Shown: in pieces, positions 1,851-61,594 of the stretch
Layout of the letters: the number at the start of each line of letters is the position of its first letter
Numbering within the stretch: position 1 is the stretch's first letter
Source: Azolla caroliniana
Taxonomy: Eukaryota; Plantae; Polypodiophyta
Length of the DNA stretch: 64,000 nt
Direction: 5' to 3'
NCBI GenBank assembly: GCA_043228905.1
Contig: JBHGNT010000002.1
Coordinates: 21,948,001-22,012,000 of the forward strand
Notes under the pieces: generated by a model
Database searches by the model: none
What the model saw: only the letters and a program-made list of their open reading frames with translations
Told to the model about the DNA's origin: nothing
Made by a program: the position numbers and the translations under genes

Positions 1851-4175
1851 CAATAGATACACGATGGAAATCATAACCACTTTGTATATTGGTTTGCATG
1901 GGGGAACATTTTGAGGTATAAAGGATTCGTATGTATAAGAGGGAACTTTGTGAGGAAGTTTCTATCTTCACTTTTGACCTTTGGCATCATACAAGATAGA
2001 TACAAAGTATATCTAGCAAGTCGTAAACATTTGTTCTACACAATTTCTATAAACAACTTTATTGCAAAGTTTTGGGTAGACAAGAATGGCATGAGGATTA
2101 TAGGTCTCCAATCCATTAATGATTCACACAATGCCTCCTTTAATGAAAGTTTTCATAGACCATCTTTTCATGCATGTATGCAAGTACTTGACAATGATTA
2201 TTTTTGTACCTTGAACCTAGCACTTTGATCTCAAACAATGGTGAACAATAACACAAGGCTTTCCAAGCAAAGTGAAATTGCCTTTACACATAATATAACA
2301 TATCTTCGACATCATATGCTAAAGCACAAAGTGAAATTGATTATAATTTCATGAGTTTTTATAAGTTTTCTTAACTTTTAAATATGTTGACATCAATGTA
2401 ACACAAAATTTGGGTTTTTTTAACATAACATGAATATAACATATGACAAAGTTAACTAGTCAACAATTTGAAACATAGTTGACAACTAAAATGAGCTTCA
2501 ATTTACTTAGAATATAAAAATGAAGATGACAATACTATTCAATTTTTAGGTATAATAAATAATATACTATACTAAAAAATGAATTATTTGACTATTTAAG
2601 GATTCTGGGGATAAATATGTCAATTACAAAAGTTCAATCAATGCATGTCACATTTCTGTCATAAAAGAACTATTCGATGATGTAGGACCCAATTACATGC
2701 TCTGATACATGGATAATTGCAAAACATGTTATCCTACTTCACAACGAGACCATGATTCACATCTTCAATCAGAGGGTGTTGACCTTTTGACCATGTGCAT
2801 TCCATACTCAACACCAAATTGCAAAAAAAGTTTCATTGATGTCGACTTTTGTAGTGAAATGTAAAAACTGGAAGATTTACTTTACGATATATTTTGCTAA
2901 ACTTTGAATTGTTTCATTTTCATTAAGAGTTAGGGTACTATCAAAAACAGCCTAGAATAACAAGTAACATCAACTCTACTTCAACTCATTATTCTTGCTC
3001 CCTTGTGCATTGTATGTTCAACATCAAATTGAGAAAAGGACCATTACCTTTTATGTCCACAAGCATATAAAAATATCAAACCCATGATATTAAATTAGAA
3101 CAGCATTGCTCATTTATTCTTCATACTTGGGGCATTATAAAAAACACCCATAATACCAAGTTCACCAATTCCAGTCCCCATGCTGTTAAATATATCAACA
3201 ATAGATTATAAAACTGTGTCATACGTTAAATTTCTATTGCTTAGCAAAGTGTGACAGTTCAAATACTATGATTTAACATATTTAACTTTTCATGAACAGA
3301 TAAATTTGGTAAATAATTTGCAGCCTGATTACTAAATTGAGCTACCAAATCAATTAGAATCATTATTCAAAACAAATTGATATTCCTTTAAGATCAACAA
3401 TGTCAACAAGTACAGCTCAAAAGAAGTACAGTATTTGCCAACATCTTCCACAATTAATTTATTTGCATTCAGCATGATTTAATAGCACAAACAGGATTAA
3501 CAATGTCCGAATACAATATCAAAACATTAATACAAGTGCGCGTGTGGCAACCTGTCTGTACATTTTTCAAAATTGTTTTTACAAGAATTATAAAATCATT
3601 TTAAAAAACAATGTTTTACCTTGACGTTTACTCCATAATCACAACTTTAAATTTAGATCATTTATAAAGTAGATATTTTAAAATTATATCACAGTATGGG
3701 ATAGTCCTTAACCAGTAGTTGCAGTTAGGTCGACAAACAATGGGTTTATGTCACTAAAGAATGGGGTTATGCCGACAATATATTGTCCTCTTTGACCCAG
3801 GGGTTGTGTGAGTAGAAAACAAAGGAAATGACAGCGATACCTTCGAAGGTTTTTTGTTCCTTCTAGAATTGTAGTCATATCTATTGTTTTTAAATGCATG
3901 CATTATTGGCACATTCTGTTCAGTATGCAGGTTAATTAACCATTGATGACAAGAATCTGTGCCTATATTTTGGTTATTTACAAAGAGAGACCTTGGAAAG
4001 AAACAACATATAAACAAAAAACTCACTAGATCTTGCTCCGTTCAGCACATTCTACTTTTGGTGCCTATGTATGTAGTCATTGAATTAATGCTCTATTAGA
4101 AATCCAGCAACCACATCCAAACAAGAATGAATACACCCTTTAAAGGTGTTATATGCTCTCATGTTTCTCCCAGTT

Positions 4176-7300: not shown

Positions 7301-10300
7301 ACTGAAGTGGATCGCTGATAGTTGGCATTTTCTTTTACTGCTCATGCTAGTAATGACTTAAGACAATCCAATTGGAGTGCATCTGACACTGATCAATATA
7401 ATCCATAGATTCCCCATTGCATATCTATTGGGACTCTGAGGTCTTTTATTCACTATATGATACTGAGAACATAGTACAATGTTGAAGACTTTCCAGGAAT
7501 CCACAAAGTTGCAAAAGATCCTCTCCACCATCATGTGGGGATTAAAAGCACAATCCCATACTCCACGTATGCATCTAAAGACCTGAATAAAGCCAATCAA
7601 GTTTAATGTCCCTTCAAAGGTAAGTGCATAATGAAAGTAACGAAAATGCCTCAAAATCACCTTCTGAGGCAGCATGTGAAACTGAATGCTTACCAAAAAG
7701 AAACCACAAATAAGCAAGTACAGCATACAAGTTATTACATTAGGCCTATACATGCATGGTGCCTCTTCTTTTGCATTAAGAGTTTTGTATCACAAAACCC
7801 TATAAATACATATTCATAAGATCACTGTCAAACATCATTATACTACATCTGTTGCAAATGTCCCAATAAGGAACATATACGCCAGATATGTGTTACCACT
7901 AAATGACAAACAGACATTTCTGGTGATGGATACTGCAATGAGAACTGCTTACAAAGATATTCAAACAAGAAAAAAACCTAATTACCGATGCCCAAAAGGC
8001 TTGCACATGCCCAAAAAAGAGAGTAGGTGTTGGTTATTTTTAACATAACAAGAACTATGATACCCTATTTCTCACTAATAAATAAAAACGGAATGCTACT
8101 GCAATTTGAGCTCAGAAAAATTTCTGACATGCATCAGAACGATAAAACAAGGGGATCCAAACACTCTATAATAGATATACAAACATGATAAAGAATATAA
8201 ATATTTCCCTTTACTAACCATTATGTTCCTTCTCAAATGCTGGGATGAAGTCGTGTGTGTCGACATGCACTAATTTTCTGCCATAGTTCTATCAATAACC
8301 CAGGAAACATTAGCCACCAGAAGCAAATGGCTAAGAACTTTAATGATATGATACTCACCATCACTGTAAAGTGTGTTTCATAATCTGTTAAACTGCTGCC
8401 TTCCAGTGTGTACTTGTTATTCGATATTCTTGCCTGTGAAACAGCAACAAAACCTTGATGTAAATAGGAATCATGGCCCAGAGAAATACAAATTTATCTA
8501 GATGCAAAAGCACTACATTATTTCACAACAGTCTATGATTATGAATTTTGTAAAAACTACAAAAATTGAGATGCATCATAAGAAGAATATTATGATGAGC
8601 TGGTCAAAAAGGCTTACTCAGGCATCAGCATGTAAGTTAGAAGCATGACTTTAGAATACATGATAAACGTATATTGTAAGAGAGAATTTAAGGTCTAGCC
8701 ATCCTAAACCAGAGTCTGTGCAAAAGTCAAAAGTACATTAGAGTGCAGGGCAAGAAATATCCTTGCAATGCTTAGAGCTCAAATAAACTAGAGTTAGATG
8801 AGACCTACCCTTAGTTCAAACATGTACATATTGTAAAATCTGCAAGCAAGAAAGAAAGAAAGAAAGATATATTAACGTCTTTTAAGAGGCCAAAATGGCC
8901 TATAAGACCAAATAAGAGATTACATCTTAAGTGTTGTCTCGTCTTTGAGAACAAATCAAAATAAAATAAATATTACACAGTAAATATAAAAGTAAATAGC
9001 ATGAAAAGAAAAGAAAAGAGGGAATCTGGTTTTTGGCACATGTGAGATCCTCAACTTAGGTATATTGTAGCTTTTGTCTTCGAAAGATCTCTAGCATAGG
9101 TCGATCCAGGATGGAAATGTCTCCGAAGCGAGGGAAGCACCTACGATGGCGGGAGATAATGGCTTTTATCTATCGATGACAAGGGTGTCGAGGTCGTGGT
9201 CCATGGGGCCAGGGCCTACGTGCACGGCAAATTGCCATTGCCAAGAGAGCCTGTTAGTGTTTCAAATCCACCTCTGAGACAAACCATGATTACAAAATGG
9301 ATAGCGCCAGATTCTTTATAGTGAAAGAATAGTCTAGGTTTCCTCAGGATCCATAATAATATTCTTAATTATACTAAGAGGTGTCTTTAAATTTAGTAAT
9401 GACTCTTGATGCTCTTTTACAAGCAAGAATCGCAAAACTACTATCTGAAGGACGAATTCTGTGAGGAGATACCATGTCAGGTAAGGATTGGTATAGCAGA
9501 GCAAAGCAACGAAGAAGTGCATTGATTAAACCTGGGTGTCCTCAGGCAGTTCAGACATGATAAGCAATGATGTTCAGAATCTGGTTCTAGTATGACATAC
9601 ATGCCGTAGCTCAGGACTTACAGTCCCTATCATCTGTATTGCTTTGTGTGCTCAATGTTGACATCTCAACACATTGTTGGTGGAGCACTGGCCTAGGGAA
9701 GAAGTCAGTGATGTGTAACTGCCTCTGCCCCATGTACTAATCTCCAGTAAGCTTGGGCCAAAGTCTCACAGATCAGCCTTCTCCGTCATGTATCCGAAGG
9801 TGATGTATTTGGCAAAGAGTGTCACATACTTCTGTAGGTCGGATAACTCAAAATGAAGTTTTACTCACTCTCAACCTCTTCTTGACATAGTTTTTAAAAT
9901 GCTCTCCTTTTTTTATCTGTAGCTGGTGAAGGAAACTCTGAGTTGCCTATTGCTTTTTAAGAAATACAGAGCAAGTAGATGTTTGTGTACCTTGGTCTTT
10001 ATATGAATTCATCCTTTGAGACCTCACAGAATTATCTTTATAGCAGACCATCCTTATGAAAAAAGGCTCTTTTGGGTGGGTGAATCAAGATTTTTGGGTC
10101 AAGAGTTTCCATAATTCTTGCCCCATTACCTTGTTCTTTTTACCATCTCGAGACAGTGTTGAGTACGGGAAAGATGGCAGATTCCCACTGTGAAGGCCAT
10201 TGCTGTTGAATGGCTTTGTCACATGTGAACACCATAATCTACCTCCCTCTTTTGTTCCAACCATTTTCTTTAATTTTTTAAACTCCTTATCTGTGATTCT

Positions 10301-19300: not shown

Positions 19301-22300
19301 AAGACATCTAAATGCCTTAAAACTATTTTGTACGGACAAAGGTTTGTCAATCAACATGAATAAAACTGAAGTGATGGTGTTTAACACCACCCAAGCATGG
19401 GTAACAAGATCAGAACCAGAATTCTTCTTGGGAGAGGAAAAGGTGGAATACACACACTCCTACACATACCTAGGAGTAACATTTACAGGACCTAGGTTCT
19501 CCTTACAGGAGGCTGCTTGTGCCCAGCTTTCTTGTGGATATGCAGCCCTTGGTGCTCTCGAGAGACAATGTGCACATTTGCAGTTCCAAGAGCCACGGAC
19601 TAAGCTATGGTTATTTGATACACTTGTCACACCAACACTTCTCTATGGAGTAGAGACATGGGGACTGAATCTTAACAAGACAAATCATTGGAAAGATTTA
19701 GAGAGACCTTTAGTGTCAATGATTGCTCGCATGATCAGGAGCAAAGCATCGGTGCCCCACGATATAATCCGGGCAAAGATGGGAGCAGCACCTATAATAA
19801 CCGAGGCATTGTTCCGATCAATGACATTTATCCAACATCTTTGGGAGCTCCCTAAACGAAGGTACCCAAGGTTGGCACTTATGTCATCAAGACAACTGGC
19901 TGAAAATGGAGACACTCATTGTTGGTATGCTGAAATGCAGCAATGATTCGAGTCACATGACATGAGTATAAATGCAATACCCCCATTCCAATATAGCTTG
20001 GACTGTCCCCATTTAAATATAACCAAAGTGGAAAAGAATAGAGTGATCCGAACTGATATTATTAACTTGGAAAACAAGATAACATGGATCAGCCCCAAAA
20101 TACCACTTGGTACAAAGATGGCCCACTATAAGACACACTTCTTACATACATCGGAGGATGGTGTCATGAGGCCACCTTACATAGAAATACATCTATCCTA
20201 TGCGATGCGTAGTGTGATAGGGCAGTTGCAAACTTCATCACATCAGCTACGGATTGAGGTAGGCAGATATACACGACTACCTCTAGAAGAGAGAATTTGC
20301 CAATTGTGTCATCAAGGAGTGGAATCTGAAGAACACTATGTTTGTCATTGTAGTGTCTTCTATGAAATCAGAGGGAGATACCATTGCCTCTTTAAACAAG
20401 GCTTTGGCCCACTACGCAAGGTAATGGAATATGAGGACCAACGATGCCTAGGACTTTTCTTGCTAGAGCTCAAGAGACATCGAGAAAAGTTGTTGAAGAA
20501 TACAGCCACACAAGCTTATGCACAAAGAACAATCACAACTTTCTTTAGCCCCATCACTCCTACTAACACTACAAGTCAATCACGGGATACACAAATGGGC
20601 TTCAGACCAGGACATAACAAACGGGTTATAATTGATCGGGCAATGGCAATTTGCCGTGCACGTAGGCCCCGGCCCCATGGACCACAACCTCGACACCCTT
20701 GTCATCGACAGATAAAAGCCATTATCTCCCGCCAACGTAGGTGCTTCCCTCACTTCGGAGACATTTCCATTCTAGATCGACCTATGCTAGAGATCTTTCG
20801 AAGACAAAAGCTGCAATATACCTAACTTGAGGATCTCACATGTACCAAAAACCAGATTCCCTCATTTCTTTTCTTTTTATGTTATTTTCTTTTATATTTA
20901 CTGTGTAATATTTATTTTATTTTGATTTGTTCTCAAAGACGAGACAACACTTAAGATGTAATCTCTTATTTGGTCTTATATGCCATTTTGGCCTCTTAAA
21001 AAACGTTAATATATCTTTCTTTCTTTGCACTCTCAATTAACCCTCACACTTTTATCCTTGTGTGTAGAATACTAAGGTATAGACTACCATGTGATAAATT
21101 ATGGTCATGCCCATAACATTCTCCCTCTCTTTACAACATTGCATTCTTGCGATGAGAGATTAGGTAAGTTAGTTTTAATGGTGTTTTCTTGTTTCATGTA
21201 GCATCTTTTATAGACTTACTCAAATTGTTTTAGAACACAAATGCTTTGTGGTACATGTTTAGAAACTAAATCTTCAGAAGTAACCAGAGTTTTAGTTGTA
21301 ACTATATTATCATTAGAACCAATAAATTTTTTTAGACAACTTACATGAAAAACCGGATGGATTTTAACACCATCAAGATGAGCAAAACGATGGTTGATGA
21401 ACCAATGCGTTTGATAACTGTGAAGGTCCACAAAACCGTGGGGCTAACTTAGCGCATTACTTGTGGTAGTTTGTACCGTAGTATTCTACACACGAGATAA
21501 ATTATGGTCATGCCTGTAACAATTACCGTAGTATCAAGATGAGCAAGACGATAGGCTGATGAACTAATGCATTTGATAACTGTGAAAGATCCACAAAACC
21601 GTGGGGTAACTTAGCACACTTCTTGTAGTAGTTTTTACCGTAATATTTTACACATGGGATAAATTACTATCATGCCCGTAATAGTTACCTTGGACACAAC
21701 AAAAGAGTTTGTCTAAAAAAGGAGAACTAACGCCATAACATGTAGTACAAGGATGGTTTGCAAAGAATAAAAGAGGGCTAACTACATGACAAGCTTGGTG
21801 GATAGACCACATGAGTGGAAATAGTCACCTACACATCCATCTACATTGACTAAACTAATCGCAGACATGTACGGTCTACCCTATGTAATCCATTGATCAA
21901 GGATGCCCATCAATCACACGGCCCAAATATTCAAGGAAACAATGCTAGGAAATACCATCAATGGCTACGAAACTTGCTAAATCTATCTTTGAAATGCATA
22001 ATACAACCCCTTGGAGAATGGCTATCCAAGGAACTCTCACAGAGTTGGCGTAACAATAGGATGCAAGATAGATGACATGGATTGTTTAGTCTCTATAATC
22101 TCAAGTGTTAAGGGCTCAATGATGTATAAAGAAGAAAGAAAGAAAGAGAGATATATTAACCTCTTTTAAGATGCCAAAATGGCCTATAAGAACAAACAAG
22201 AGATTACAAGAACAAGAAACCAAAATAAATGTAACTAAGTAAAAGAGTAAACGTGACTTAAAGAATCCAGTTATCTATACATGTAAAATTCTCAATTTAG

Positions 22301-32555: not shown

Positions 32556-33481
32556 GATTTGATGGTAGCTTTCTTTTGGATGGGTGGACTTATGGATTAC
32601 TCCTTTATTTTCAAAACCATCCATTGCATGTCTATTCTTCTTGTTAGTGGATTAGAGACAAAAGTTGGATTCTCTTGTCTTGGTGGACTGACACAAAGGG
32701 TCGAACGACTTACTTACCGAGTCATTCTATCAATGGAATTGTGGTCGGAGATTGGAGTCAGACGACTCTACTCAATGCTTGCTTACACACCATTAAACAG
32801 AACACATACATCGAATTACCATATACTATTATGATCGACTGTTAACTATCTTTATTCCAAGTAAGATAATTCTGAATTGTAGAGACACAGAATATACTCT
32901 AACTAACAAAATTCTATTAACTTATAACAATAAAGACCAATGATGTTACAATGCTCTCGGTCCCTTTTTATAGGCGACTTGAGAGACTTTACCAAGATGA
33001 TACAATTGTCATTCGGCAAGAACCTACAGTGACAACTAATTGTCCTATTTTCCTACTTGGCGATTCGACTATTCCCTTTCACACTTGTCCTATTACGACT
33101 ACGACTTTGACTCCTATTTTGACTATCCTTCACTAATTTGTTGACGTATGTACTTGGCTAGCTTAGTCTGTCTATCCGACCAGCTAACACATGGCACACT
33201 CATGGGACGGTGCCTTGCACGGTCAAACCCCAAAAATTTGCCACTTAGTCATCGTCATTCCCATTTACATCCTCCCGTTTGTCCTCATTTAGAATGTCCA
33301 GCAAATTGGGCTCCTTCTCGCCTTGACCTTCATTCTGGTCCGTTGTCCGTGGCTTGTTGACTTTCTATTTGTAGTTGTTCGGCATGTGGAGTCGAATCTG
33401 AACCATTAAAAATATGGGTTGTCTGTTGACTTTGGGTTTGCTCTTGTTGCTCTCTGTTGACTTGTTGTGAAGTCGACCAAC

Positions 33482-36400
33482 TTAGAATTTAGAATTATAA
33501 TTTTTTATCGTCCATAAAGAGGCCAATTTTGACCTATGGGACCATAGTATACATGTGTTCTTGATATGCGTCTCCTTCCTAAGAAGGGGTATTCATACAT
33601 TGAAGCACAAAGTCTCTATGTGTGACTAAAGCATACACATATGAGCTCAACCTTCTCGGTGGTGTCTTAAGTATGACACTTAAGTTATCACTCCCTTTTA
33701 GTATGTCAACATATCTTGAATGAATTGCACTATATGTCGAGCATGTGAAGAGCAAGTGACATTCATCCTCTACCATGCCTTCATTGCGTACTTTGCATAT
33801 CTTCAAGTCCGTTACATTTTGATACCATGATGCAACTTCAATACCTAACTTGTGAGGTTGAGTGCGAAGCAGTGTAAGGGCTCTATGAGCATTACTACTC
33901 ATATTGGTAATGAGATAAGGTTGGATATGATCAATAGGCATTCTTGCTTTATATTGAGACCAACATTCAGGGTTGACATTTGCAATGTAGTATTCTAGCT
34001 TTGTCCTCTTAGCATCTTCCCACTTCATCCTTAATGATTCCACCAACCTTTTCTCAATCATTACATACTACATAGCATTGCCCGAAAGCTCTAAAAGATC
34101 ATCCACACCCCATCTTCTAAACCATTTCCTTATGTCAAAAACCCAACCGGATTCTTTTGTAGCTCACTTTTATGATTCTTTTGTAGCTTACATCCAACTT
34201 CCAATGTGGTAATTGATGATTCGACATATTCTCAACTTTTGTAATGTATTTATATACTCTTTGGAGTGCCAATAGTTCTATGGGTCGAACACCTATTTCC
34301 AAGAGCATAACCTGGTAAGAGGTAGTGCATTTAACTCCTAATTGCCTCCTGAAAAACATCTTTTGAATTTTCTCTATCTCATTCCATGCATTAAGAGAGA
34401 TGGTGCCACCCCATACTTCTACTCCATAAAGCAATACTTGAGTTACCATGGCATTGAACAACATTAGTTTTACTTCCCATCCACAAGTATCACTTTGGTT
34501 GCATTGGTTGCATTGGTTCTCCAAAAGATCATACGATTTCCAACCGCCTTGGAGCCTAGAATCAAAGCATGCACTCCATTTATTTGTGGCAGGTACGTCA
34601 ATACCAAGATATTTAAAGCATTGAACAAATTGTATATGTTCTCCTCTATATGTGAGCATAGGGTAATGATGAGGTTGGATGGTTTGCACTACCATCATTT
34701 TTGTTTTCTCCACATTCACTGCTAGTCCACTACTATGGCAAAATTCTTCTAAGTAAATGTTGCATACTATCAACATCATATGAGAAGAGTACCACATCAT
34801 CTGCATATAGAAGCAATAAGATGACGTGTTGCATCAATTTGGGGGCATTCAATCCTTCTTCTCTTGCAACCTTATTCACCACTTCTTCTAATTTACCAAT
34901 ACATAAGCCAAAGAGTGTGGGTGATAGTGGACATCCTTGCTTGACCCCCATGTTACTTAAAAAGTGCTTTGAGAATCCACTATCCATTTTTAGTTGGCAT
35001 TTAACTTGCTCATATAGACATGCAATAGCAACTCGGTACTCTAATGGCATGTCAATCTCTACCATTCTATTCCAAAGCTCACTTCGTGGTACGGTATCAA
35101 AAGCTTTCTTGAAATCAACAAAACAACAATAAAGTTTTTTTCCTTGCAGTAGACTCTCTTCCATGATTACTCTCAATGTGACCAAATGATCCACAATGGA
35201 ATGTTTTGGTCTAAATCCTACTTGCCCAAGTGCTCTTTTGCTTGTACTTTCAGCCCATGTGCGTATCTTTTGCCCCATAATAGTGCTATATAATTTAGCA
35301 ATAGTTGAGCTCACCATTATTGTATGATAATTTGATACTTGATTCTTATCTCTGGTTTTAAATATTGGTTTAATCCAATTCATAAGCCAATAATTTGGAA
35401 ATCCTTGTTTTATAGCTTGCTCTATAATTGTCATTATCCAATGACGAGTATGTGGCATTGTCCATTTTAAAAGCTCACTTGAGATGTATGTTGCATCTGT
35501 TGCTTTCCCACTCGCCATCTTCTTTATTGCCTTATTGACATCATCAATATCAATACATGTAGTGCATGGTGTTTCAATTTTCTCAACCATAGGCGCCACA
35601 CCTTCATGCATATATAGCCTTTGTACATAGTCTAACATCTCTTCATTTGTAAAGTGACCTTTCACATCTTCTTTCTTACCCTTGAGTTGTCCCCATGCTA
35701 ATTTTCGTTTGAGCTTAAACCAGTTTTTCTTTTTCATCTCTTGCATTTGGAAATATCTTCTTTTCTTTCTCCTCACTACTTTCTTATATAGGTGCCATGC
35801 AACAATCTTTTCATTTTCCCCTTCTATGGACTTAAACCATTTGAGATACATCTTACATTCATCGTCGAACCAAGAATTATGTGGAAAACTACACATCTTA
35901 TGCCCACCCACATGCCTTTTAAAGTATTGATATCCAACCTTAAGGATGATATCCTTCAAATGTAACCAATTTTCTTTAACATCGTTGCTTAGAGAAAAAT
36001 TTAACAAAATTTGGTTCTCCACTTCATTTGCATACATCTTAGCTTTTTCGTAGCAAGGTCAGATGATACATCTATTTTCCTCTTTCACTCCATGGCATCT
36101 ATTGGTGAAATGTGGAATTGCAAGCTCTAAGTACAATGGCTTGTGGTATAAGTCTGGAGATAGAGAACCAACTTTAAACACATTCACCAATGATAGATCA
36201 CATGCCAACATTAATGCATAATCAACCACACTTCCTCCACCCGAGGATGGTAAACATGTGAACACATTTGTCAATGGGAATGCCTTTATACCATTTAGGA
36301 TAATCAAGTTTGTGCAATTTAGCATATGTATCAAAAGTTTTCCATAATCTGACATGACACAATCCTCTAAGTCACGCGTGCAATAGATAATGTTCTACTA

Positions 36401-37960
36401 CATTTTCTTTAAATGTCGTCACATTTTGGAAATTTCCAACCCTTGCATTGAAGTCTCCCATAATTAAAACTTTATCAATCTTCTCAAATGAAAGTATATC
36501 ATGGCATAATTCTGTAAAAGGATCATCACAATCTAACCCAAACCTACTATAGTAGTTTGAGTCTTTGTGAGGAATGTAACATGCAACTATATACAACTTC
36601 TCTTTCCCCAAATTAGCCTCTATCCATATGTATCTCTTATAGTCATCTTATTTGCATATTTTGATAGAATTATCTAAGCACTCATGGTAGATACATGCTA
36701 TCTCTGCACGCCCAATATTCCCTTTGGAGTGAGGCCATATCCATTTTATGAGGTATCCGTCTATCTTAGTGTACGTTTTGCCTCATGTTCCCATGTTTCA
36801 ACCAAAAATATAATATTCATACCTTGAGCTACACCATTGAGTCCTAAACCCTTATTCCATGGATATCCTCTACAATTCCAAAACATTACTTTTAATCGTG
36901 AAGCACTTTTAGTCCCATAGGTCATTGTTTGCTATGCATTTTGATTTTTCTACAATCTTGCTCTTGTGGAGTTCTATCATCTGTTACAAAAAAACTTGTC
37001 CCTTTTAAGTACACCTTACTACTATCTAGAATCATTGCCCTTTTACGTTCATCAAGGATTGTACAAACAATAGCTCGAGATGACTTTCCCTCTAGTTGCT
37101 TTTTGCCAACCCTATGTGTGGCATATACAATAACATCTCCCATAACAAAGTGATCTTCAAAGAATTTTGTAATATTCTCTCTGAGAGATAATGCATTCTC
37201 TATTTTATTCTCTTGCATACCTCTAATCACAATATTATTCTTTCTTCTTTTGATTTCATATTGCTCCTTTGCATCTAACACATCCATGGTATTAGAATGC
37301 CTTTGCGCGATTTTTGGTGTTTCTTTCAAGAGAACATCATTCCACCTTGTCATGATCACATCTTCCTTCCCTTCAATTGTAGATTTTATTTCGGCATTTT
37401 CCTTCACTAAAATCTCTTTTTCTGCTTCAAGACTCAACAATTTTCTTTCTATTTCAGGCATCCAATTATCTTGCATTTGAATATTCATGTTCTTCATTGC
37501 ATGTAGTTCTTCATGCAAAACTTTAATCTCTAACTTTTGCATTTCCATTGTATGTTGAAGAGTTAATTCTCTCTCCTTACAAGCATACATTTCGCTTTGC
37601 ATATGCATCACTATCTCTTGCAATGAGATATACATAGCTCCCATCTTTTCCATTGATAAAGTATGCATTTGATTGTTTGGTCTTTCAATCACATCATCAT
37701 TGACTTTTACTCCTCTTTGCCTATTTGTTATTAATAAAATGATAGAAAAAGTAGAACGCACCTTTTCAATCGATTTAGGGTTTCAAAATCTACCTTGAGT
37801 TTGAGGAACCGCGGGGCAAAGAGGGTTGTAGAAGAAAATACTCATAAATTCTCACCATGGTAATGGAATTCAGCAAATAAACATTCATTAGAAAGCTCTC
37901 TGAAAGAGCTTTCCAATGAGGTATAGAATGCCGAAAACGATGGTGGGAGAGAGATGGGCA
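33482..37960 (-). mobile_element. Full-length but decayed two-ORF non-LTR retrotransposon (RTE-X-like, tentative clade)
   Basis: ORF1 36922-37761. ORF2 from ATG 36925 to stop 33579, broken by stops and frameshifts: FWNCRG, GDFNAR, SVVDY (APE); VDFKKAFD, QGCPLSP, YADD (RT); EDECHLLFTC. 3' hairpin and (ATTCTAA)-like tail. The 5' boundary is approximate. Confidence 0.88.
36922..37761 (-). CDS. LINE ORF1: coiled coil plus RRM-like domain
   Basis: Heptad-rich N-terminal half, then RRKNNIVIRGMQE..HRVG..RAIVCT..LKGTSFFVTDD, the pattern of L2/Crack/RTE-X-type ORF1. Confidence 0.75.
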   Translation of the reverse strand: MRSTFSIILLITNRQRGVKVNDDVIERPNNQMHTLSMEKMGAMYISLQEIVMHMQSEMYACKERELTLQHTMEMQKLEIKVLHEELHAMKNMNIQMQDNWMPEIERKLLSLEAEKEILVKENAEIKSTIEGKEDVIMTRWNDVLLKETPKIAQRHSNTMDVLDAKEQYEIKRRKNNIVIRGMQENKIENALSLRENITKFFEDHFVMGDVIVYATHRVGKKQLEGKSSRAIVCTILDERKRAMILDSSKVYLKGTSFFVTDDRTPQEQDCRKIKMHSKQ

Positions 37961-48078: not shown

Positions 48079-51000
48079 TTATGTGATTGGTGGTGGGAAC
48101 AACCATACTGGTGGCGCTAAGCACCATTTAGGTCTTGAATTTTGTATTGTGAGAAAAGGGGTCTTCTTCCAATAGACAATAAATTCGAGACGTTGCAACA
48201 CTGCAACATCTGTCTCACCTTTAATATCCTCATACTGTCCTTTCAAGGTATGTACCATCTCCATCCAGACATTCCGTGTACTTTCCACTGGATGAATAGT
48301 AGTATTACCAAACACCTTAGAACACCTAGCAGTCCAAATAAACCACATTGTGGTGGTGCATAGTAGCTCCCATACCTCTTGCATTGTCTTTAACATGTAA
48401 GGAGCCTCCATTTGACTTTGTTGCACCGCCATTATCCTTCCTCTTTGAATTCTAATAATCGTGTCATTTGGGCATGCATCATATGGCCACACCACTTGTG
48501 CCACTGTGGCCCATACTACCATACCCCACGAAAAACTGCAATCCCTAAACATAAAGGCAAGAACTCGGAACACTCGCCTCCAAACTTGCTGTGCAGCATG
48601 ACATTCCCACAAGCAATGTTTCAATGTCTCCATCTGACAACAACAATAGATGCATGCGGTCGGTGCAGCTGATTGTTGCAACCATTGGCCAATTGGCAAT
48701 GCTCTATGTATTACTAACCATTGGAAGACATTTATTTTCATATCTTGCTTCCTTTTCCATAATGTTCCCCAAAACTTTGTTAGGAATTCCGATGTGATCC
48801 CTTGGTGGTTCCAAAATTGACTAGCTCGTGGTGTAGTCCTACGTTGAGCTGCCAAAATGTGTCGTCCCATCTTAACTGAATACTGAAAAAAACCATACCT
48901 TTTTCCCATACGATCAAACGGATCTTTCCACCAAAATTCTCCCGGATCCCATTGCAACCTTATCAAAGGTTTCTTTTCAAAAACTCTCAGTTTCCAATGC
49001 TCCTTGACCGCCTCAACTTGTGGGTCGATGAGCCACTTAGATCCGTCATAAGCAAGGACCCTTATTTTAGAAAATGTAGCATATTGCAAGATCTCTGTTT
49101 GTATCGTTGCACTACTTATACTGCCATCTTCCTCCACCTCATAGTCTTGACATCGTCCGCAAGACAAATGTCCCCTTACCCCCACTAGCACTTGAAGCCT
49201 CGTAAATGCTCCTTCCCACTTGGGAGGGTTAAAGGATCATATCGTAACGTCAGAGTGCCCCAAAACTGACTGCACTTGGTCCCACATAATCAGCCCCCCT
49301 CTCAAGGAAGACAAGAATTCTGATCTGTCATTTATATTCAGAGTATGAAATGATTTCCATGCATCAACGGACACTCTTGGCCCTACATCGAGCTTGGCCC
49401 AATCCAATCGCGTTCGGGACCCCAACATGTGCCCTGATGGCAAACGCATATTCGGATTCCACACTAAGTTTTGTCTCAAGTATTCGTCCTCACATGTTGG
49501 TACACCATGTTCCAACCCTTTATGTACATGCTCCCATGCTCGTAGAAGACCATTAAAAAATTTGTCTTCCCAATTCCTAGACATAACATGTTTCTTGTCT
49601 GGTATAAAAATCCACCTTATGCTATCAGCCCATAATCCACCCATCGACGGAGCACAACTATACAATCTTTGCATAAGTAATTGCTTCCAAGGAGCATGTC
49701 CTGGTAAAAGGCCACGAATTATTAGTTTTGCTAACAAGGCCATGCATTGGTCTAATGGATCTATAATCCCCAAACCACCGTATTGTTTTGGGGTTATCAA
49801 TGTACTCCAAGCCACCTTCGCTCTTACATGACTCTTATCTTCCCCAGCCCATATAAAATTCCTAACCAGCCTTCGAATTTGTCCAATGCACGATTTTGAA
49901 AAGATCCAAGATGAGGCTATATACCACACCGTAGATAGTAGCACATGGTTGGCAACTATCACTCTACCGGCCAAAGATAGTTTAGCATGACTCCACAAGA
50001 ATAATTTTTTCCTCAAAGTTAATAGTAATGGTGCAGCATGTAATTCTGGAACCAAATCAATCCCAACCTACACTCCAAGATATCGAACCGCAACTCCTCT
50101 TTGAGTCCATTGGAAAGTATGATGCGGTGCCCAACAAGGCGGCAGCTCCTTGCTTACCCAAAATGCAACAGTTTTCTCCCAATTTAGCTTAGCTCTAGAC
50201 GCTATACAAAACTGTGACAAAGCCCCTTGTACTTGTTGCAAATTCGTTAGAGTCCCATCCACATATAATGCAGTGTCATCTGCAAATTCCGAGTCCAATA
50301 TATCTTGTCCATGCATTGGCATTGCCAAACCACGCAAGCCTATAGATTGTGATGATATAAATGCATGCATTGCTTCCGCAAACAGAAGGAACAAAAATGG
50401 TGCAAGTGGACATCCTTGGCGAACTGATCGAGTAATGTTAAAACGAGGTCCTACTCCACCTGCCAACAACACCTGACTGTGTGCATTTCTATAAAGACAA
50501 GAAACACCTTTAATCCATGCCGTGTTGAAGCCCAAGTGATGCATAGTACCTTCCAAAAAATTCCAGTCAACCCTATCATACGCTTTCTCAAAATCTAAAA
50601 GCAACACGGCTAGATTTTGTTTGTTTTTTACCGCTACTGCAGTAGCCTCCCAAAATGTAAAAACATTATCCATAATACTCCTTTCCCTCATAAAACCAGT
50701 TTGCGATACATGAATTATCTTTGGTAATACCTCTTGTAACCGAGAACTAAGCAACTTTGCAAATAGCTTATAACTAGTATTCAAGAGGGTGATTGGCCTC
50801 CACTTACGAATATCTTCTGAAACTCCTTCTGTTTTAGGTATAAGATAAATAAGCCCCTCAGATAACGACATGGGCATCTCTCCACTTTCAAACATATGTT
50901 GGTAAGCATCTTTTAAGTCTTTCTTCAGTATCCCCCAATATTTCTTGTAGAATTTAGGTGTAAGTCCATCCACTCCAGGACAACTATTGTCCGATAAAGA

Positions 51001-52425
51001 GTGTAGCGCTTGTTCCAACTCCAATTCTGTAATAGGTGACAACAATGAATCTTGCATTGCTTGAGTAACCTTGGGTTGAATTTCCGCCCAGACCTTCATT
51101 CTATTTTGGCTTATCTCCTCAGAGATAGGCTCTTCTGACAAAAGGGTAGCGTAGAATTTCGTGGCAATTACCCGCACAACATTTGGATCCATTTCAAGTT
51201 CGCCATTTTCATTCCGCAAACAACAGGTTACATTAGAGACTCTTTTGGGGCCTTTAATATTAAAAAATTGTTTTGTACATCTATCCCCAATTTGCGTCCA
51301 TCTTGAAGCAGAATTGTGATACCTAAATTGACTACGACATTCTTCCATATGTTGAACTTGTTTTCGGGCTTCTTCAAGATGTGAAGCTATCCACACACAC
51401 TCTGGTCGACCCTGTTGCAATCTTTGCAAAGATAGCAATCTTGCCCTCATCCTTCTTTCCTTCTCCAGATATTCCATATATTCAGATCTTGATTTTAACG
51501 CAAAATATTGTGATATCTCCGTCAAAGCACAAGCCACTTTGATTGTAATGGGAGCATCCATATTATCTTTGTTCTGCCAAATATCTGTCACTTGATTATA
51601 CCATCTATCATGTAACATTACTTTTTCGGGTATCCTAAATCGTATGGACTCCCTTTTCGATTGCCCAAAGGTTCTCAATATAACAGGAGCATGATCAGAG
51701 AAAGTTGTGCCTGGCATAATAGTGATATTTCCCCCATTTAAGACAAAGGCCTCCCCCACATAAAATCTATCCAATCTTGAAAGATTGGTTCCAGCTATTC
51801 TCCTATCCGAACGTGAGAAACTCAAGGAATTCTGAGATCTATAAACATTAGGCATATGCCATGCATCCAAAATACTCAATTTCAAACACATCCGTTCCCA
51901 TACTGCTAATTCCTCCCCATGAATTGTTGAAACACTCCCACCTTTCCTATCCTCTGGGTCCTCAAGCATATTAAAATCCCCTGCAACACACCAATGAGAC
52001 ACATTTGGTAATGCATTTGTAATTTCACACCAAAAGTGTTTCCTAGCCGATGCATGATTTGGCGCGTAGATATTCAAGTAACCCCAAGTTGTATGTAAAT
52101 CTTGTAATACAATATATTGTGCTCTTCCTGGCACAATGATCTCTTTGCATATAATACTTGATTTCCAATGATGTGCAATTGCCATACACACCCCGCCTTG
52201 TGTACCACTAGTGCCAATAGCCGGGGACCAAAACATCTCCCAACTACCAGGTAATATAGTGCCATAGTTCCTTATTCTTTGCTCATTCAAATGATGTTCT
52301 TGAAACATCATAATGTCCAATGATCCATTCGTGAGACACTTTTGTAATTCCTGCCTTAACCTACCTCTATATCTTCGGTATAAGGGACCTCCCAAGCCCT
52401 GAACATTCCATGTGAGGAGCCTCAT
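48079..52425 (-). pseudogene. L1 ORF2 (APE endonuclease, RT, zf-RVT), 1449 codons with two premature stops
   Basis: LLTWNVQG, GDFN, RLDRFY, SDH; DFEKAYD, RQGCPLAP, FADD; ETLKHCLWEC. One frame with stops at 50068 and 49237. Confidence 0.92.
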
Positions 52426-54170
52426 CAACAATTGTTAGAGGCCGAACCGGACCCGATCCTACGAGTCTTAGAGGATGGTTCCAGGGAGCTTACTCCACCC
52501 CCATCTCCCATAATCACCATTTGGCTTTTGAGTATGTCACAACCTTCTTTAATGAATCTCCAATGATGATGGGCCCGAGCCTTGGCTTGGCTTTCCGGCA
52601 CATCATCTTCATGAATATAAACATATCCAAAATCAAACAATATATCGGAAGGGACATCCAATACAACATGCTTGCGGTTCATTGCATCCAAATACGGAAC
52701 CACTAAACAACTTGCATTCTCTAACCCCCTCAATATTGTTTCCCCCAATTGAGGATTTTGCACGTATTTGGCAAAATACAAAACTTGTCCTCTCATGGCC
52801 AACATAACATTCGGTTGATTCCATATGTCATTTCTCTCATAACCACATAATGGAAAGGAATAACCGACCAATGAGTTTTCCACTTGTTTTTGTCTAAATA
52901 AAACATGGACCCTTATTGCATTGGGTTCATGAACATCTTTAACACCCAAATGTTTTGTGAACTCATGCCCAAAGGGGGCTGCATAATCAAGTATGGAAAA
53001 GCCACCATTTCCGGTATCCTCCTTCAACATCCCACATGTTCTTATTGTGATCGCATTATCCAATTTTTGTGATTGTATTGTTCTTTTTGAACGAAATGTT
53101 TTTGCCTTGACACATCCATCATTTGGTTGGATGGTACTAACAATTTTCCCCCTTATCTCAGTAGTGGATGTTGGTTGTTCTTGTGTATCAATTTCTATGT
53201 CCAATGCATTATACGCATTAGGGGTGAGACACGTCTCTTGCATAGGCACCGTACGTGTCTTGCATCCATGCTTAGCCTTTACATTTATCCATTGAGTGTC
53301 TCTTGTTTCCCCTTGTGCCCGTACACCCATACAATCTGAGGCTAGTTTCTCTTGACATTTATCTGCCTCATGCCCTTCTTGTTTACAATATTCGCAACAA
53401 CGTTTTTTTTCCCCCAATTTAATATTTCTCCTTGGGCAATTCTTGGCTAAATGTCCCATTTGCCGACAATAGAAGCATTGTCCAGGGAGCCCGGCAAACT
53501 CCACCTTTTGTTCTATAAAATCCCCTTCTTCATTTGGTAGCCTTACCTTTGTCGGTAAGTTTTCGAGTGATTCTACCAAGATTCGGGCTGACGGAAATCC
53601 TGACATTTTACTTAATCGCATAGCCATACTTTCTTGGACCCTCACTACAGTTCCGATCCTTGAAGCTATTGCTTCAAGCATCGGTAAATACTCCTTACGT
53701 AATCCCGGGAAGACAATCGTTAACGGAAATATCCGATCTCCTTTCCGTATTGCCTCCACCGGATTAAAACCTTGTTTCCAAGGCATCACAAATGCACGGG
53801 CACCTCTTACATCAAGAGGACTATGCTCCAACATTATTCCCACTGATTCGATTGTATCCAATTCCACATGATAAAATCCTCGTCCCATGAATTGGACATC
53901 TATTATTCTACCAATTAATCCATGCATAGATGCTTGTAATAAATCTTTACACTCACCTCTATTCGGCCGAGCTCCCACCACTCTGCAGATCACCGAGAGT
54001 TGAGTTAGGCGCTGAATCTCTGATTTGAATTCAGCCTCTTCTTCTGTCGAGAATACGATCGGTAGAGGCCGCTCCTCAGATTCTGTTGGCGGGGCTGCTT
54101 CTTTAGAGTGCCCCTGTTGTGTCGTTGAGGTGGCTCTCTGCTGCGTTCTCTCTCTTCCCTGTTCCTCCAT
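52425..54170 (-). CDS. L1 ORF1 (581 aa): DUF4283/RRM-like region, two CCHC knuckles, extra C-terminal domain
   Basis: The true ATG is 54170, because the longer ORF call crosses the TSD. CFYCRQMGHLAKNC and CEYCKQEGHEADKC; frame is intact. Confidence 0.9.
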   Translation of the reverse strand: MEEQGRERTQQRATSTTQQGHSKEAAPPTESEERPLPIVFSTEEEAEFKSEIQRLTQLSVICRVVGARPNRGECKDLLQASMHGLIGRIIDVQFMGRGFYHVELDTIESVGIMLEHSPLDVRGARAFVMPWKQGFNPVEAIRKGDRIFPLTIVFPGLRKEYLPMLEAIASRIGTVVRVQESMAMRLSKMSGFPSARILVESLENLPTKVRLPNEEGDFIEQKVEFAGLPGQCFYCRQMGHLAKNCPRRNIKLGEKKRCCEYCKQEGHEADKCQEKLASDCMGVRAQGETRDTQWINVKAKHGCKTRTVPMQETCLTPNAYNALDIEIDTQEQPTSTTEIRGKIVSTIQPNDGCVKAKTFRSKRTIQSQKLDNAITIRTCGMLKEDTGNGGFSILDYAAPFGHEFTKHLGVKDVHEPNAIRVHVLFRQKQVENSLVGYSFPLCGYERNDIWNQPNVMLAMRGQVLYFAKYVQNPQLGETILRGLENASCLVVPYLDAMNRKHVVLDVPSDILFDFGYVYIHEDDVPESQAKARAHHHWRFIKEGCDILKSQMVIMGDGGGVSSLEPSSKTRRIGSGSASNNC

Positions 54171-55025
54171 CTCGTTTTTAACTTTTTCGCCCCAATATGT
54201 ACAATATTTATGTAATATATGTACATTTTTTATGTTTATTAAGTATGTATTTGTATACATACTATAATGTATATAATATGTATGTATATATGTTTAACAT
54301 GCATGCACCGGGTTCATATATGCATGTATTTATATATATCTAGTGTATTTTGTATATGTGTTCGTATTTAGTCAGTATGCATGGATGCAATGTTTATGCC
54401 ATATGTATGTGATGCCCATGTTATGCATGTATGTATGCTCCTACAAATTTAGGTAATGTTTGAATGCATCATCTTTTGGGCTTTTGTACCTTTTAGTCCT
54501 TGGTTAAATATATATTCACATAATACCCAAATCCCTTGACTATAATTACATTCATTGCCCCCATGATTTATCTACACCCTTTCTTATGAGTTCATGTGAT
54601 AGCATACAAGTTTAGGTAGTGGAGGCCTTAGGGGTAACAACCATGTTGAGGAGGCCTTGACAAGCTTATTTATAGTTTAACAAGTACACTAGCGTTTCTT
54701 AGAAGATTGTGAAAGAAATCTCGCATGCTGGTTGCAATATGAAACATGGTTTACTAGCTAAAGGACAAACAATGTGGTTGTAAAAGTCACATGAAGAGCA
54801 AGTGTTTTGTGATTGCAAGTTGTTGTTTTGTTTGTAGCATGCTTTTTTTATAAAGAGTTTTTAACTAAGATGATTGGCGATTTAAATACAAAACTTTTGG
54901 GATGTGAAAAGTCAAAAAAGCAAGAGACATAAGAGTTAAGCATAAAGAAAGGATGCAAAAAATGGAAGTCAAATTGCAAGCATCGATCACGTTAAAAATT
55001 GTACAAAAAAAAGATTACGTGTTAC

Positions 55026-55056
<31 letters not shown>

Positions 55057-55298
55057 TAAAGAGCCACAAAGAAAGTCGGGTTTAAAGAAGGGAACATTAG
55101 AGAAGGGGGAGGGGGGGGGGGGGGACTAGAGACAAGACGAGAGGGAGGTCGGAACCCACGAATTCCGTGGCGTGACCAAAGAAGATGAGAGCAAGTATAG
55201 TAGGAGTAGTAGTAGGAGTGGTTGGCAGGTCGGTTTGTCCGCATTGGAAGAGGCCGGGGACGGGGACAAGTGTCTCCCTCCCATAGCGCAAAGAGAGA

Positions 55299-55349
55299 GA
55301 AAGAAAGAAAGAAAGATATATTAACGTCTTCCAAGACCAAATTTGGCCC

Positions 55350-55355
<6 letters not shown>
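55299..55355 (-). mobile_element. 57-bp extreme 3' fragment of the 61.6-kb LINE, inserted in a (GA)n tract
   Basis: (GAAA)n GATATATTAACGTCTTCCAAGACCAAATTTGGCCCATGAGA matches 61599-61655 with 2 mismatches. Confidence 0.85.

Positions 55356-55383
<28 letters not shown>

Positions 55384-61310: not shown

Positions 61311-61378
<68 letters not shown>
61311..61378. repeat. (AG)~34 microsatellite
   Basis: Pure dinucleotide run. Confidence 0.9.
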
Positions 61379-61380
<2 letters not shown>

Positions 61381-61594
61381 ATTATTTACGGAGGTCAAAT
61401 ATGACCTATAAGACTAGAAATATTATGTTTCACGTAATACATGTGAAAATGAGTAGTGACTCTCAATGTTCAAGAACGTTACCAATGAATATTGCAATCA
61501 AGAGTACATATTGCTATTGTGAGAGAAATTTGTGCAAGTATCGAGTTTGTCGAAGATGTGTGAAAGGCATTGTTGAATGTGATCAAAGGTATGA

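What the first reader, a model, noticed from the sequence alone, without database searches (positions are those of the whole stretch)
33510..36925. LINE 3' hairpin arm is exactly complementary to the ORF1-stop/ORF2-start junction 3.4 kb upstream: candidate long-range RNA switch
Seen: 33530-33542 (TGACCTATGGGAC) is the exact reverse complement of 36912-36924 (GTCCCATAGGTCA). In the element RNA the junction reads CA-AUGA-CCUAUGGGACUA, where ORF1 ends at UGA and ORF2 starts at the overlapping AUG. The 5' arm of the terminal hairpin reads UGGUCCCAUAGGUCA. Together these give 15 contiguous pairs including one G-U. Known: 3' stem-loops are RT recognition signals in stringent LINEs, and ORF2 of bicistronic LINEs is made by reinitiation. 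Inference: the arm can either fold locally (RT loading) or cover the stop-start site (RNA circularisation or translational control), so the two states exclude each other and could couple ORF2 synthesis to cis template capture. A 13-mer inverted match somewhere in 4.4 kb is not very improbable; the signal is that both halves hit the two key functional sites.
Basis: partly seen in the sequence, partly recalled or inferred. Interest (0 to 1): 0.8.

Follow-up and report, generated by a model that had tools for sequence, protein, structure and literature searches.

The report
LINE stop codon pairs with 3' hairpin
In a clade of plant LINE retrotransposons, the RNA just after the ORF1 stop codon is complementary to the 3'-terminal hairpin 3.4 kb away, and the pairing is kept by compensatory changes, so these elements probably gate reverse-transcriptase synthesis by stop-codon readthrough, as some plant RNA viruses do.

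Summary
In the minus-strand LINE, 36910-36924 pairs with 33530-33544: 15 bp including one G-U. In this copy alone that is not beyond chance. A second perfect 13-nt inverted pair lies in the same 5 kb and is not kept in relatives.

The junction/3'-arm pairing is kept. In 11 further full-length relatives (ORF2 identity down to about 25%) the stretch after the ORF1 stop finds its best downstream partner at the 3' end; two more are moderate. Five helix columns show compensatory double changes. Three lineages carry unrelated helix sequences at the same two places.

In intact relatives:
- ORF1 ends at an in-frame UAG (or UGA) 6-9 nt before the helix.
- The contexts are UAG-CAA, UAG-GGA and UGA-CGG.
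- Eight of fourteen elements have no in-frame AUG before the endonuclease domain.

Best reading: a long-range helix stimulates readthrough to give an ORF1-ORF2 fusion and competes with the local 3' hairpin. The closest analogue is the tombusvirus PRTE-DRTE switch. I found no prior description for LINEs. All evidence is computational. A first-reader note elsewhere in this genome (s1-501346) also proposed readthrough at a LINE UGA-CGG junction.

The parts
33503..37761 (-). Decayed L1-type LINE copy: ORF1, broken ORF2, 3' UTR. The 5' end was not determined.
   Evidence: ORF list and Pfam RVT_1 / Exo_endo_phos_2 hits. The full-length relative L009 carries Exo_endo_phos + RVT_1. Contigs diverge into tail repeats at 33502/33503.
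36922..37761 (-). ORF1 as it reads in this copy. Its last roughly 12 codons are out of the family frame.
   Evidence: Alignment A1 shows a 25-nt gap relative to L001, L002 and L003.
36946..36947 (-). Site of the copy-specific 25-nt deletion that shifts the ORF1 frame
   Evidence: alignment A1. Position read.
36932..36934 (-). The family's ORF1 stop codon UAG, in frame with ORF2, in a UAG-CAA context
   Evidence: L001/L009, L002 and L003 end ORF1 here.
36925..36931 (-). 7-nt spacer between the stop codon and the helix
   Evidence: The spacer is 6-9 nt in all elements that show the pairing.
36910..36924 (-). Junction strand of the long-range helix (UGACCUAUGGGACUA). It is an island of nucleotide conservation with no local partner.
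33579..36925 (-). ORF2 remnants (endonuclease and reverse transcriptase), broken into at least five pieces
33530..33544 (-). 3' strand of the long-range helix, which is also the 5' arm of the terminal hairpin (UGGUCCCAUAGGUCA)
33510..33543 (-). Local 3' hairpin: basal stem GUCC/GGAC and apical stem GGUCA/UGGCC
   Evidence: Covariation on alignment A3.
33480..33509 (-). Conserved GAUAA box followed by a short AATTCT-like repeat tail
   Evidence: Tail repeats appear as loose ends at 33502/33503.

Best explanation
SHOWN BY COMPARISON

The window holds a decayed copy of a very abundant L1-type LINE with a 'stringent'-type 3' end: a hairpin, a GGACGWUAA box and a microsatellite tail.

In this family and its sister families, a 12-17-nt stretch starting 6-9 nt after the ORF1 stop codon is complementary to the 5' strand of the 3'-terminal hairpin about 3.4 kb downstream. 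The complementarity is maintained by compensatory substitutions. In three lineages it is maintained by entirely different sequences. ORF1 and ORF2 are in the same frame, separated by a single UAG or UGA. Most members have no AUG from which a complete endonuclease domain could be started.

INFERRED

1. The long-range helix sits at the ribosome's mRNA entrance when the stop codon is in the A site.
2. There it stimulates stop-codon readthrough, so ORF2 (endonuclease and reverse transcriptase) is made as a minor ORF1-ORF2 fusion.
3. Only RNAs whose 3' end is intact can therefore make reverse transcriptase.
4. A ribosome that reads through melts the helix. That frees the arm to refold into the local hairpin, the presumed reverse-transcriptase recognition element.
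5. Reverse-transcriptase synthesis is thus coupled in cis to presentation of the template's 3' end.

The helix is the same kind of device as the PRTE-DRTE interaction of tombusviruses.
For: The helix is specific to these two places.
- Forward scan, every 22-nt window of each element against its own 3' UTR: the window just after the ORF1 stop is the single best of about 1,900-2,400 windows in WIN, L009, L004, L005, L007, L008, L010 and L018 (z -4.5 to -7.4).
- Reverse scan, 30 nt after the stop against all downstream sequence: the best partner lies at the 3' end in those elements and also in L006, L053, L022, L035 and L091.
- Cognate junction/UTR duplexes beat shuffled pairings. 0 of 20,000 permutations were as low. 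Among six representatives, only the identity permutation of 720 was as low.

The helix co-varies.
- Register table of nine elements: 94% of cells paired against 17-45% when slid.
- Five columns show changes on both sides. Two of them lie at arm positions that are unpaired in the local hairpin.
- The junction changes are non-synonymous (T>A, Y>H, G>E), so peptide constraint does not explain them.
- L018, L053 and the L019 group carry unrelated helix sequences at the same positions.
- There is no conserved local structure at the junction.
- The control 13-mer inverted pair from the same copy is not kept in sister families: 2-6 of 13 paired.

Readthrough fits the coding layout.
- ORF1 and ORF2 are in frame in all elements.
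- Linker indels are multiples of three.
- No in-frame AUG occurs before the WN...ETW endonuclease motifs in L005, L006, L007, L010, L053, L019, L022 and L035.
- The Pfam endonuclease match starts at residue 16 after the stop.
- The stop contexts UAG-CAA, UAG-GGA and UGA-CGG, with the helix starting at +10 to +13, match the TMV, MoMLV and VEEV/CTFV signals listed in PMC13517186.

A switch is plausible.
- The local hairpin is supported by covariation.
- It shares its 5' strand with the helix. Local hairpin energy is -10.5 to -17.5 kcal/mol; the duplex is -22.7 to -38 kcal/mol.

A precedent exists.
- CIRV readthrough needs a pairing over about 3.5 kb to a 3' replication element that also has an alternative structure (PMC3234231).
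Against: - Nothing here is experimental. There is no readthrough product, no structure probing and no ribosome profiling.
- Whole-RNA minimum-free-energy folds contain the helix in L005 and L009 but not in L007, L010 or L018.
- L006 has an A.C mismatch in the middle of the helix.
- L090, which is nested in the clade, has a UAA stop and no complementarity. L057 shows none either.
- WIN, L002, L003, L004 and L008 do have an in-frame AUG 6-36 nt after the stop, so initiation or reinitiation is possible in them.
- The G-rich junctions of L019, L022 and L035 pair promiscuously.
- The related contigs are metagenome or Logan assemblies of multicopy repeats. They may be chimeric between copies, and their source organisms are unknown.
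- Read laying did not resolve per-site variation at the two 13-mers.
Confidence: 0.6

Rival explanations
1. Chance. A 13-15-nt inverted match in one decayed copy happens to fall on two notable sites.
For: A second perfect 13-nt inverted pair lies in the same 5 kb.
Against: The pairing recurs at the same two places in 11 further full-length elements, with compensatory changes, and in three unrelated sequence versions. The control pair is not conserved.
Confidence: 0.02
2. The long-range helix controls termination-reinitiation or (non-)AUG initiation of ORF2, by covering or exposing the start site. ORF2 is then made as a separate protein.
For: WIN, L002 and L003 carry an in-frame AUG at the 5' edge of the helix, 6 nt after the UAG. 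L004 and L008 carry AUGs at +36 and +27. From my own knowledge, not checked here: ORF2 of human L1 and of SART1 is made by unconventional reinitiation.
Against: There is no stop/start overlap in the family. Eight of fourteen elements lack any in-frame AUG before the catalytic endonuclease residues. Strict conservation of the ORF1/ORF2 frame and three-nucleotide indels in the linker are not needed for reinitiation. The stop contexts and spacer match readthrough signals.
Confidence: 0.13
3. The helix serves RNA circularisation, packaging, stability or template selection only, for example by hiding the 3' hairpin until translation has passed. It has no effect on decoding of the stop codon.
For: The arm is shared with the presumed reverse-transcriptase recognition hairpin. 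Long-range 5'-3' contacts with such roles are common in RNA viruses (PMC5893793, listed but not read).
Against: It does not explain why the partner always sits 6-9 nt after an in-frame leaky stop, nor why the register relative to the stop is fixed in nine elements.
Confidence: 0.2
4. Both sites are conserved for reasons other than pairing: a conserved linker peptide (TYGT), or a shared protein-binding motif.
For: The junction motif is coding, and TYGT-like peptides recur in nine elements.
Against: The junction changes are non-synonymous and are matched by changes in the non-coding 3' arm. L018, L053 and the L019 group encode unrelated peptides, yet each is complementary to its own 3' end.
Confidence: 0.03

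Closest known systems
Tombusvirus (CIRV) PRTE-DRTE long-range readthrough switch (Cimino et al. 2011, PMC3234231)
   Same: An in-frame leaky stop lies ahead of the polymerase ORF. Base pairing spans about 3.5 kb, from just 3' of the stop to an element at the 3' end that is used to start copying of the RNA. The distal partner also has a mutually exclusive local structure. The same benefits are proposed: quality control of 3'-intact RNAs, cis-preference, and coordination of translation with copying.
   Different: That is an RNA virus replicated by an RdRp; this is a nuclear LINE copied by target-primed reverse transcription. In CIRV the proximal element is part of a large local stem-loop. Here no conserved local structure exists, and the long-range helix itself starts 6-9 nt after the stop. 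Nothing has been tested experimentally here.
MoMLV gag-pol UAG-GGA readthrough with a pseudoknot at +12; alphavirus and coltivirus UGA-CGG with stem-loops at +12 (review PMC13517186)
   Same: The immediate stop contexts are identical: UAG-GGA in L004, L005, L007, L008 and L091, and UGA-CGG in L010 and L012. The spacer is about 8 nt before the stimulatory structure. A retroelement makes its reverse transcriptase as a readthrough fusion.
   Different: In those viruses the stimulator is a local pseudoknot or stem-loop. Here it is a helix closed over about 3.4 kb.
Stringent-type LINE 3' stem-loops with microsatellite tails (plant LINE1-1_ZM lineage and green-algal L1, PMC3472496; zebrafish L2, PMC4176376)
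   Same: There is a conserved 3' hairpin with compensatory changes, followed by family-specific short tandem repeats rather than poly(A).
   Different: In what I could find, no pairing of that hairpin to the ORF1/ORF2 junction has been described.
Termination-reinitiation of LINE ORF2 (human L1; SART1 UAAUG). From my own knowledge, not checked here.
   Same: A bicistronic LINE RNA whose ORF2 is made by a non-canonical event at the ORF1 stop.
   Different: Here the ORFs are in frame, there is no stop/start overlap, and most members lack an AUG.

Membership tests
L1-type (APE + RT) non-LTR retrotransposon | ORF2 has an N-terminal apurinic-like endonuclease domain and a reverse-transcriptase domain | tested here: met
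   Window pieces hit RVT_1 (E 4e-22) and, weakly, Exo_endo_phos_2. The intact relative L009 hits Exo_endo_phos, Exo_endo_phos_2 and RVT_1.
L1-type (APE + RT) non-LTR retrotransposon | An ORF1 lies upstream of ORF2, and the genomic copies are 5'-truncated | tested here: met
   ORF1 is 266-385 aa in relatives. Contig depth rises about 75-fold from the junction to the 3' end in two DNA runs.
L1-type (APE + RT) non-LTR retrotransposon | Placement in the L1 clade by RT phylogeny with reference elements | not tested
   No reference LINE set was available. The nearest named proteins are hypothetical proteins of a fern (Adiantum) and a liverwort (Riccia).
Relaxed (poly-A-dependent) L1 | A 3' poly(A) tail and no conserved 3' structure | tested here: not met
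   The tails are (AATTCT)n, (ATCT)n(CT)n, (TTC)n, (AAATC)n, (TGTAA)n or (GTAA)n, placed after a conserved hairpin.
Stringent-type LINE 3' end | A conserved 3' stem-loop supported by compensatory changes, followed by short tandem repeats | tested here: met
   Alignment A3: 94% of cells paired against 25-55% when slid, and three pairs with changes on both sides. Tails as.
Stringent-type LINE 3' end | The element's own ORF2 protein binds the stem-loop, and the stem-loop is required for retrotransposition | not testable with these tools
   Needs retrotransposition or binding assays.
Programmed stop-codon readthrough with a 3' stimulatory structure | A single in-frame stop lies between two long ORFs, with the frame conserved across relatives | tested here: met
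Programmed stop-codon readthrough with a 3' stimulatory structure | A leaky stop context and a structure starting about 8 nt after the stop | tested here: met
   Contexts are UAG-CAA, UAG-GGA/GAA and UGA-CGG, with a 6-9-nt spacer. Compared with the table in PMC13517186.
Programmed stop-codon readthrough with a 3' stimulatory structure | The readthrough product is demonstrated | not testable with these tools
   No proteomic or ribosome-profiling data were examined.
Long-range (PRTE-DRTE-like) readthrough element | The proximal element pairs with a distal element in the 3'-terminal copying signal, with covariation | tested here: met
Long-range (PRTE-DRTE-like) readthrough element | The distal element has a mutually exclusive alternative structure | tested here: met
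   Prediction only. The arm is the 5' strand of the local hairpin in every lineage, including L018 and L053.
Termination-reinitiation at overlapping stop/start (AUGA, UAAUG) | The ORF1 stop overlaps or abuts an ORF2 AUG across the family | tested here: not met
   An overlap is seen only in the window copy, after its 25-nt deletion. Eight of fourteen elements have no in-frame AUG before the endonuclease domain.

The most novel reading that the evidence does not exclude
A widespread clade of plant LINEs, seen in fern- and bryophyte-like sources, makes its reverse transcriptase only as a readthrough ORF1-ORF2 fusion. The readthrough is switched on by a 3.4-kb-range helix to the element's own RT-recognition hairpin. 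This would give LINEs a built-in RNA switch for 3'-end quality control and for cis-preference, evolved convergently with, or shared with, the one in Tombusviridae.
Probability: 0.5. Interest if true: 0.9.

Novelty: new variant of a known kind. Interest (0 to 1): 0.8.

Why it matters
Two questions in LINE biology are long-standing. How is ORF2 protein made in tiny amounts from a bicistronic RNA? How does it come to act preferentially on the RNA that encoded it (cis-preference)?

A conserved, co-varying helix links the ORF1 stop codon to the 3' recognition hairpin. It offers a concrete RNA-based answer for one clade, and that answer can be tested directly with reporters and compensatory mutants.

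It would also be the first case known to me of a virus-style long-range recoding switch in a cellular retrotransposon. That extends a mechanism known from Tombusviridae and luteo-like viruses to nuclear mobile elements.

Annotation pipelines that require an ORF2 AUG would misjudge these elements as inactive.

Tried and rejected
- Other copies in the window: blastn of the element against the window found no second copy of this family, only microsatellite hits and a distant RT match at 63.6 kb.
- Read laying on two DNA and two RNA runs showed abundance, the 5'-truncation gradient and the tail repeats. It did not list per-site variants at the two 13-mers, so it does not settle the family consensus.
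- Whole-RNA minimum-free-energy folding gave mixed results: the helix was present in 2 of 5 elements. I treat this as weak evidence either way.
- Riccia locus L089: the gene model did not translate to the query and the junction could not be placed, so I left it out.
- The Adiantum locus returned no DNA.
- L012's 3' end is replaced, so its own pairing could not be scored.
- Rfam holds nothing relevant. Pfam finds no domain in ORF1.
- I rejected the chance reading and the peptide-constraint reading (see the rival explanations).
Only natural copies were compared.
Full report
WHAT IS IN THE WINDOW

The finding lies in a minus-strand LINE. ORF1 reads from 37761 to 36922. ORF2 (endonuclease and reverse transcriptase) runs from 36925 down to the stop at 33579-33581, but is broken into at least five pieces. 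The unique sequence ends at about 33503. Beyond that, contigs from public runs diverge into (AATTCT)n-like tails.

In the RNA sense it extends to 15 pairs with one G-U, 36910-36924 against 33530-33544. The 3' partner is the 5' strand of a local hairpin at 33510-33543.

In this copy alone the match proves little. A second perfect 13-nt inverted pair lies in the same 5 kb.

CORRECTION OF THE JUNCTION

ORF1 homologues led to three related contigs, L001 to L003, at 91%, 62% and 65% ORF1 identity. Aligned to them, the window copy lacks 25 nt just upstream of the junction. This shifts the ORF1 frame.

In the intact relatives ORF1 ends at the TAG corresponding to window 36932-36934. That codon is in the same frame as ORF2. 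The 'AUGA' overlap therefore exists only in this decayed copy.

The motif GACCTATGGGACTA was invariant in all four sequences, while its flanks varied.

RELATIVES WITH BOTH ENDS

Full-length elements came from two sources:
- ORF2 homologues: L004-L008 and L091.
- One scan of metagenome contigs: L009-L088.

L009 is a full-length close relative of the window element. In L004-L007 the stretch after the ORF1 TAG is complementary to the 3' hairpin arm, with visible compensatory differences.

UNBIASED SCANS

Forward scan. I compared every 22-nt window of each element with the first 120 nt of its own 3' UTR using RNA.duplexfold.
- The window just after the ORF1 stop is the single best of about 1,900-2,400 windows in WIN, L009, L004, L005, L007, L008, L010 and L018 (z -4.5 to -7.4).
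- L006 is weaker (z -3.5).
- L019, L022 and L035 fall in the top 0.3%.
- More distant elements with other layouts show nothing.

Reverse scan. I compared the 30 nt after the stop with all downstream sequence.
- The best partner again lies at the 3' end in WIN, L009, L004-L008, L010 and L018, and also in L022 and L035.
- L053 joins them: its partner straddles the ORF2 stop, at -37 kcal/mol.
- L091 joins them too: 14 of 14 paired, 228 nt after the stop.
- L019's best partner in this direction lies far downstream of its 3' UTR, so L019 rests on the forward scan only.

Cognate against non-cognate pairings. Cognate junction/UTR duplexes average -30.7 kcal/mol against -24.1 for permuted pairings. 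None of 20,000 permutations was as low. With one representative per sequence type, only the identity permutation of 720 was as low.

COVARIATION

I placed nine elements of the GACCUAUGGGAC type in register.
- 94% of cells pair, against 17-45% when the partner is slid.
- The distance from the stop is identical in all nine.
- Five columns carry changes on both sides: U-A/C-G, A-U/G-C, U-A/C-G, G-C/A-U and C-G/A-U.

On a quick ORF2 tree, by my own reading, these changes need at least seven separate events.

Two of the five columns involve arm positions that are unpaired in the local hairpin. Only the long-range helix explains those.

The junction substitutions change amino acids (T>A, Y>H, G>E), so a peptide constraint does not account for the conservation.

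L018, L053 and the L019 group have unrelated sequences and unrelated linker peptides at the same two places. Each is complementary to its own 3' end.

The junction has no conserved local structure.

As an internal control, I followed the other 13-nt inverted pair of the window copy into sister families by codon position. There it pairs at only 2-6 of 13 positions.

THE LOCAL 3' HAIRPIN

Fourteen 3' ends, including three further ones in this window, align to a common plan:
- a basal stem GUCC/GGAC (or GUCU/AGAC);
- an apical stem GGYCR/YGRCC;
- a GGACGWUAA-like box;
- a family-specific microsatellite.

94% of cells pair against 25-55% when slid, and three pairs change on both sides. This fits the 'stringent' LINE 3' ends described for a monocot L1 lineage and for green algae (PMC3472496).

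The local hairpin is predicted at -10.5 to -17.5 kcal/mol. The intermolecular-style duplex with the junction is predicted at -22.7 to -38 kcal/mol. The two share a strand, so they exclude each other.

WHY READTHROUGH

- ORF1 and ORF2 are in the same frame in every element of the clade.
- Indels in the linker are multiples of three.
- In L005, L006, L007, L010, L053, L019, L022 and L035 the first in-frame AUG is at least 183 nt downstream or absent. That is beyond the WN and ETW motifs of the endonuclease. By my recollection of human L1 endonuclease, these motifs correspond to catalytic N14 and E43.
- The Pfam endonuclease match in L009 begins 16 residues after the stop.
- The stops are UAG, or UGA in L010, L012 and L013. 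The contexts are UAG-CAA, UAG-GGA/GAA and UGA-CGG.
- The helix begins 6-9 nt after the stop, that is at +10 to +13.
- The review PMC13517186 lists UAG-CAA (TMV), UAG-GGA with a pseudoknot at +12 (MoMLV) and UGA-CGG with stem-loops at +12 (VEEV, CTFV). It explains the spacer of about 8 nt by the length of the ribosomal mRNA channel.

The closest analogue is the tombusvirus CIRV. Its readthrough to the polymerase needs a pairing over about 3.5 kb between a stop-proximal element and a 3' replication structure that itself has exclusive alternative folds. The proposed roles are quality control, cis-preference and coordination (PMC3234231).

LIMITS

- Everything is inferred from sequence.
- Whole-RNA minimum-free-energy folds hold the helix in L005 and L009 but not in L007, L010 or L018.
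- L006 has a central A.C mismatch.
- L090 (UAA stop) and L057 lack the pairing.
- Five elements have an in-frame AUG near the junction, so initiation there cannot be excluded for them.
- The related contigs are assemblies of multicopy repeats from unnamed sources.
- Read laying shows that the family is extremely abundant and 5'-truncated in two coded organisms, and that many contigs share only the hairpin. It did not resolve variation at the two sites.

The second LINE in the window (ORF2 at 61773-63905, hairpin at about 61628-61660) is 73.6% identical in ORF2 to L012. L012 has an in-frame UGA-CGG, an 8-nt spacer and then GGCCCAUGUGACAAA. This pairs with the 61.6-kb arm at 16 of 17 positions, with one U.U mismatch. 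The prediction is nearly met, although the stop is upstream and in frame, not an AUGA overlap.

PRIOR WORK

Nine full-text searches and five papers turned up no description of pairing between a junction and a 3' hairpin in a LINE, and no description of readthrough expression of LINE ORF2. The library lacks most subscription journals, so this is not proof of novelty.

Another first-reader note in this genome (s1-501346) independently flagged an in-frame UGA-CGG LINE junction without an AUG. I saw the same context in L010 and L012.

VERDICT

It is wrong about the AUGA reinitiation site.

The best mechanism is helix-stimulated stop-codon readthrough, coupled to presentation of the 3' hairpin. I put about 0.9 on the helix being real and selected, and about 0.55-0.6 on this function.

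Noticed in passing
window 61610-63905 (-): A second LINE. Its ORF2 C-terminal 710 aa are open and run off toward the window end. Its 3' hairpin starts GTCTCATGGGCCA and is followed by AGACGTTAATATAT and a (CTTT)n tail. It is 73.6% identical in ORF2 to L012 and L014. The junction lies outside the window.
   Followed up: partly
window 61378-61428 (-): An isolated LINE 3' end: a hairpin starting GTCTTATAGGTCA directly followed by a long (CT)n array. It looks like a severely 5'-truncated copy of the L005/L006-type family.
   Followed up: no
window 8826-8933 (-), 20948-21055 (+), 22110-22217 (-): Three copies of one short repeat. Each ends in the same kind of hairpin (GGTCTTATAGGCCA, a TTTT loop, then GGCC), then AAGACGTTAATATAT and (CTTT)n. 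They are either a SINE that borrows the LINE 3' end or truncated LINE tails. The hairpin motif occurs 10 times in the window against 1.3 expected.
   Followed up: partly
window 55274-55381 (-): Another hairpin + AGACGTTAATATAT + (CTTT)n 3' end, sitting directly after a (CT)n array. It looks like one LINE tail inserted into, or next to, another's microsatellite tail.
   Followed up: no
window 33544 and 33502/33503 (loose ends): Dozens of contigs in two DNA runs share only the hairpin (33503-33544). They diverge both upstream and into different tail repeats, (AATTCT)n or (ATTCT)n. Several subfamilies or non-autonomous elements therefore use the same 3' module.
   Followed up: no
window 33916-33928 / 35930-35942: A second perfect 13-nt inverted pair inside ORF2. 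It is kept in the close relative L009 but not in sister families (2-6 of 13 paired), so it is best read as chance. It served as an internal control.
   Followed up: yes
window 48079-54260 (-): A run of long ORFs (370, 272, 787 and 611 aa) on the minus strand. It may be another transposable element. I did not examine it.
   Followed up: no
L090 (ERZ22827526 contig), 1-60 and 3330-3400: This element is nested in the pairing clade but has a UAA stop and no junction complementarity. Its very short 3' UTR has a hairpin that overlaps the ORF2 stop. It may be a lineage that lost the switch, or a chimeric contig.
   Followed up: partly
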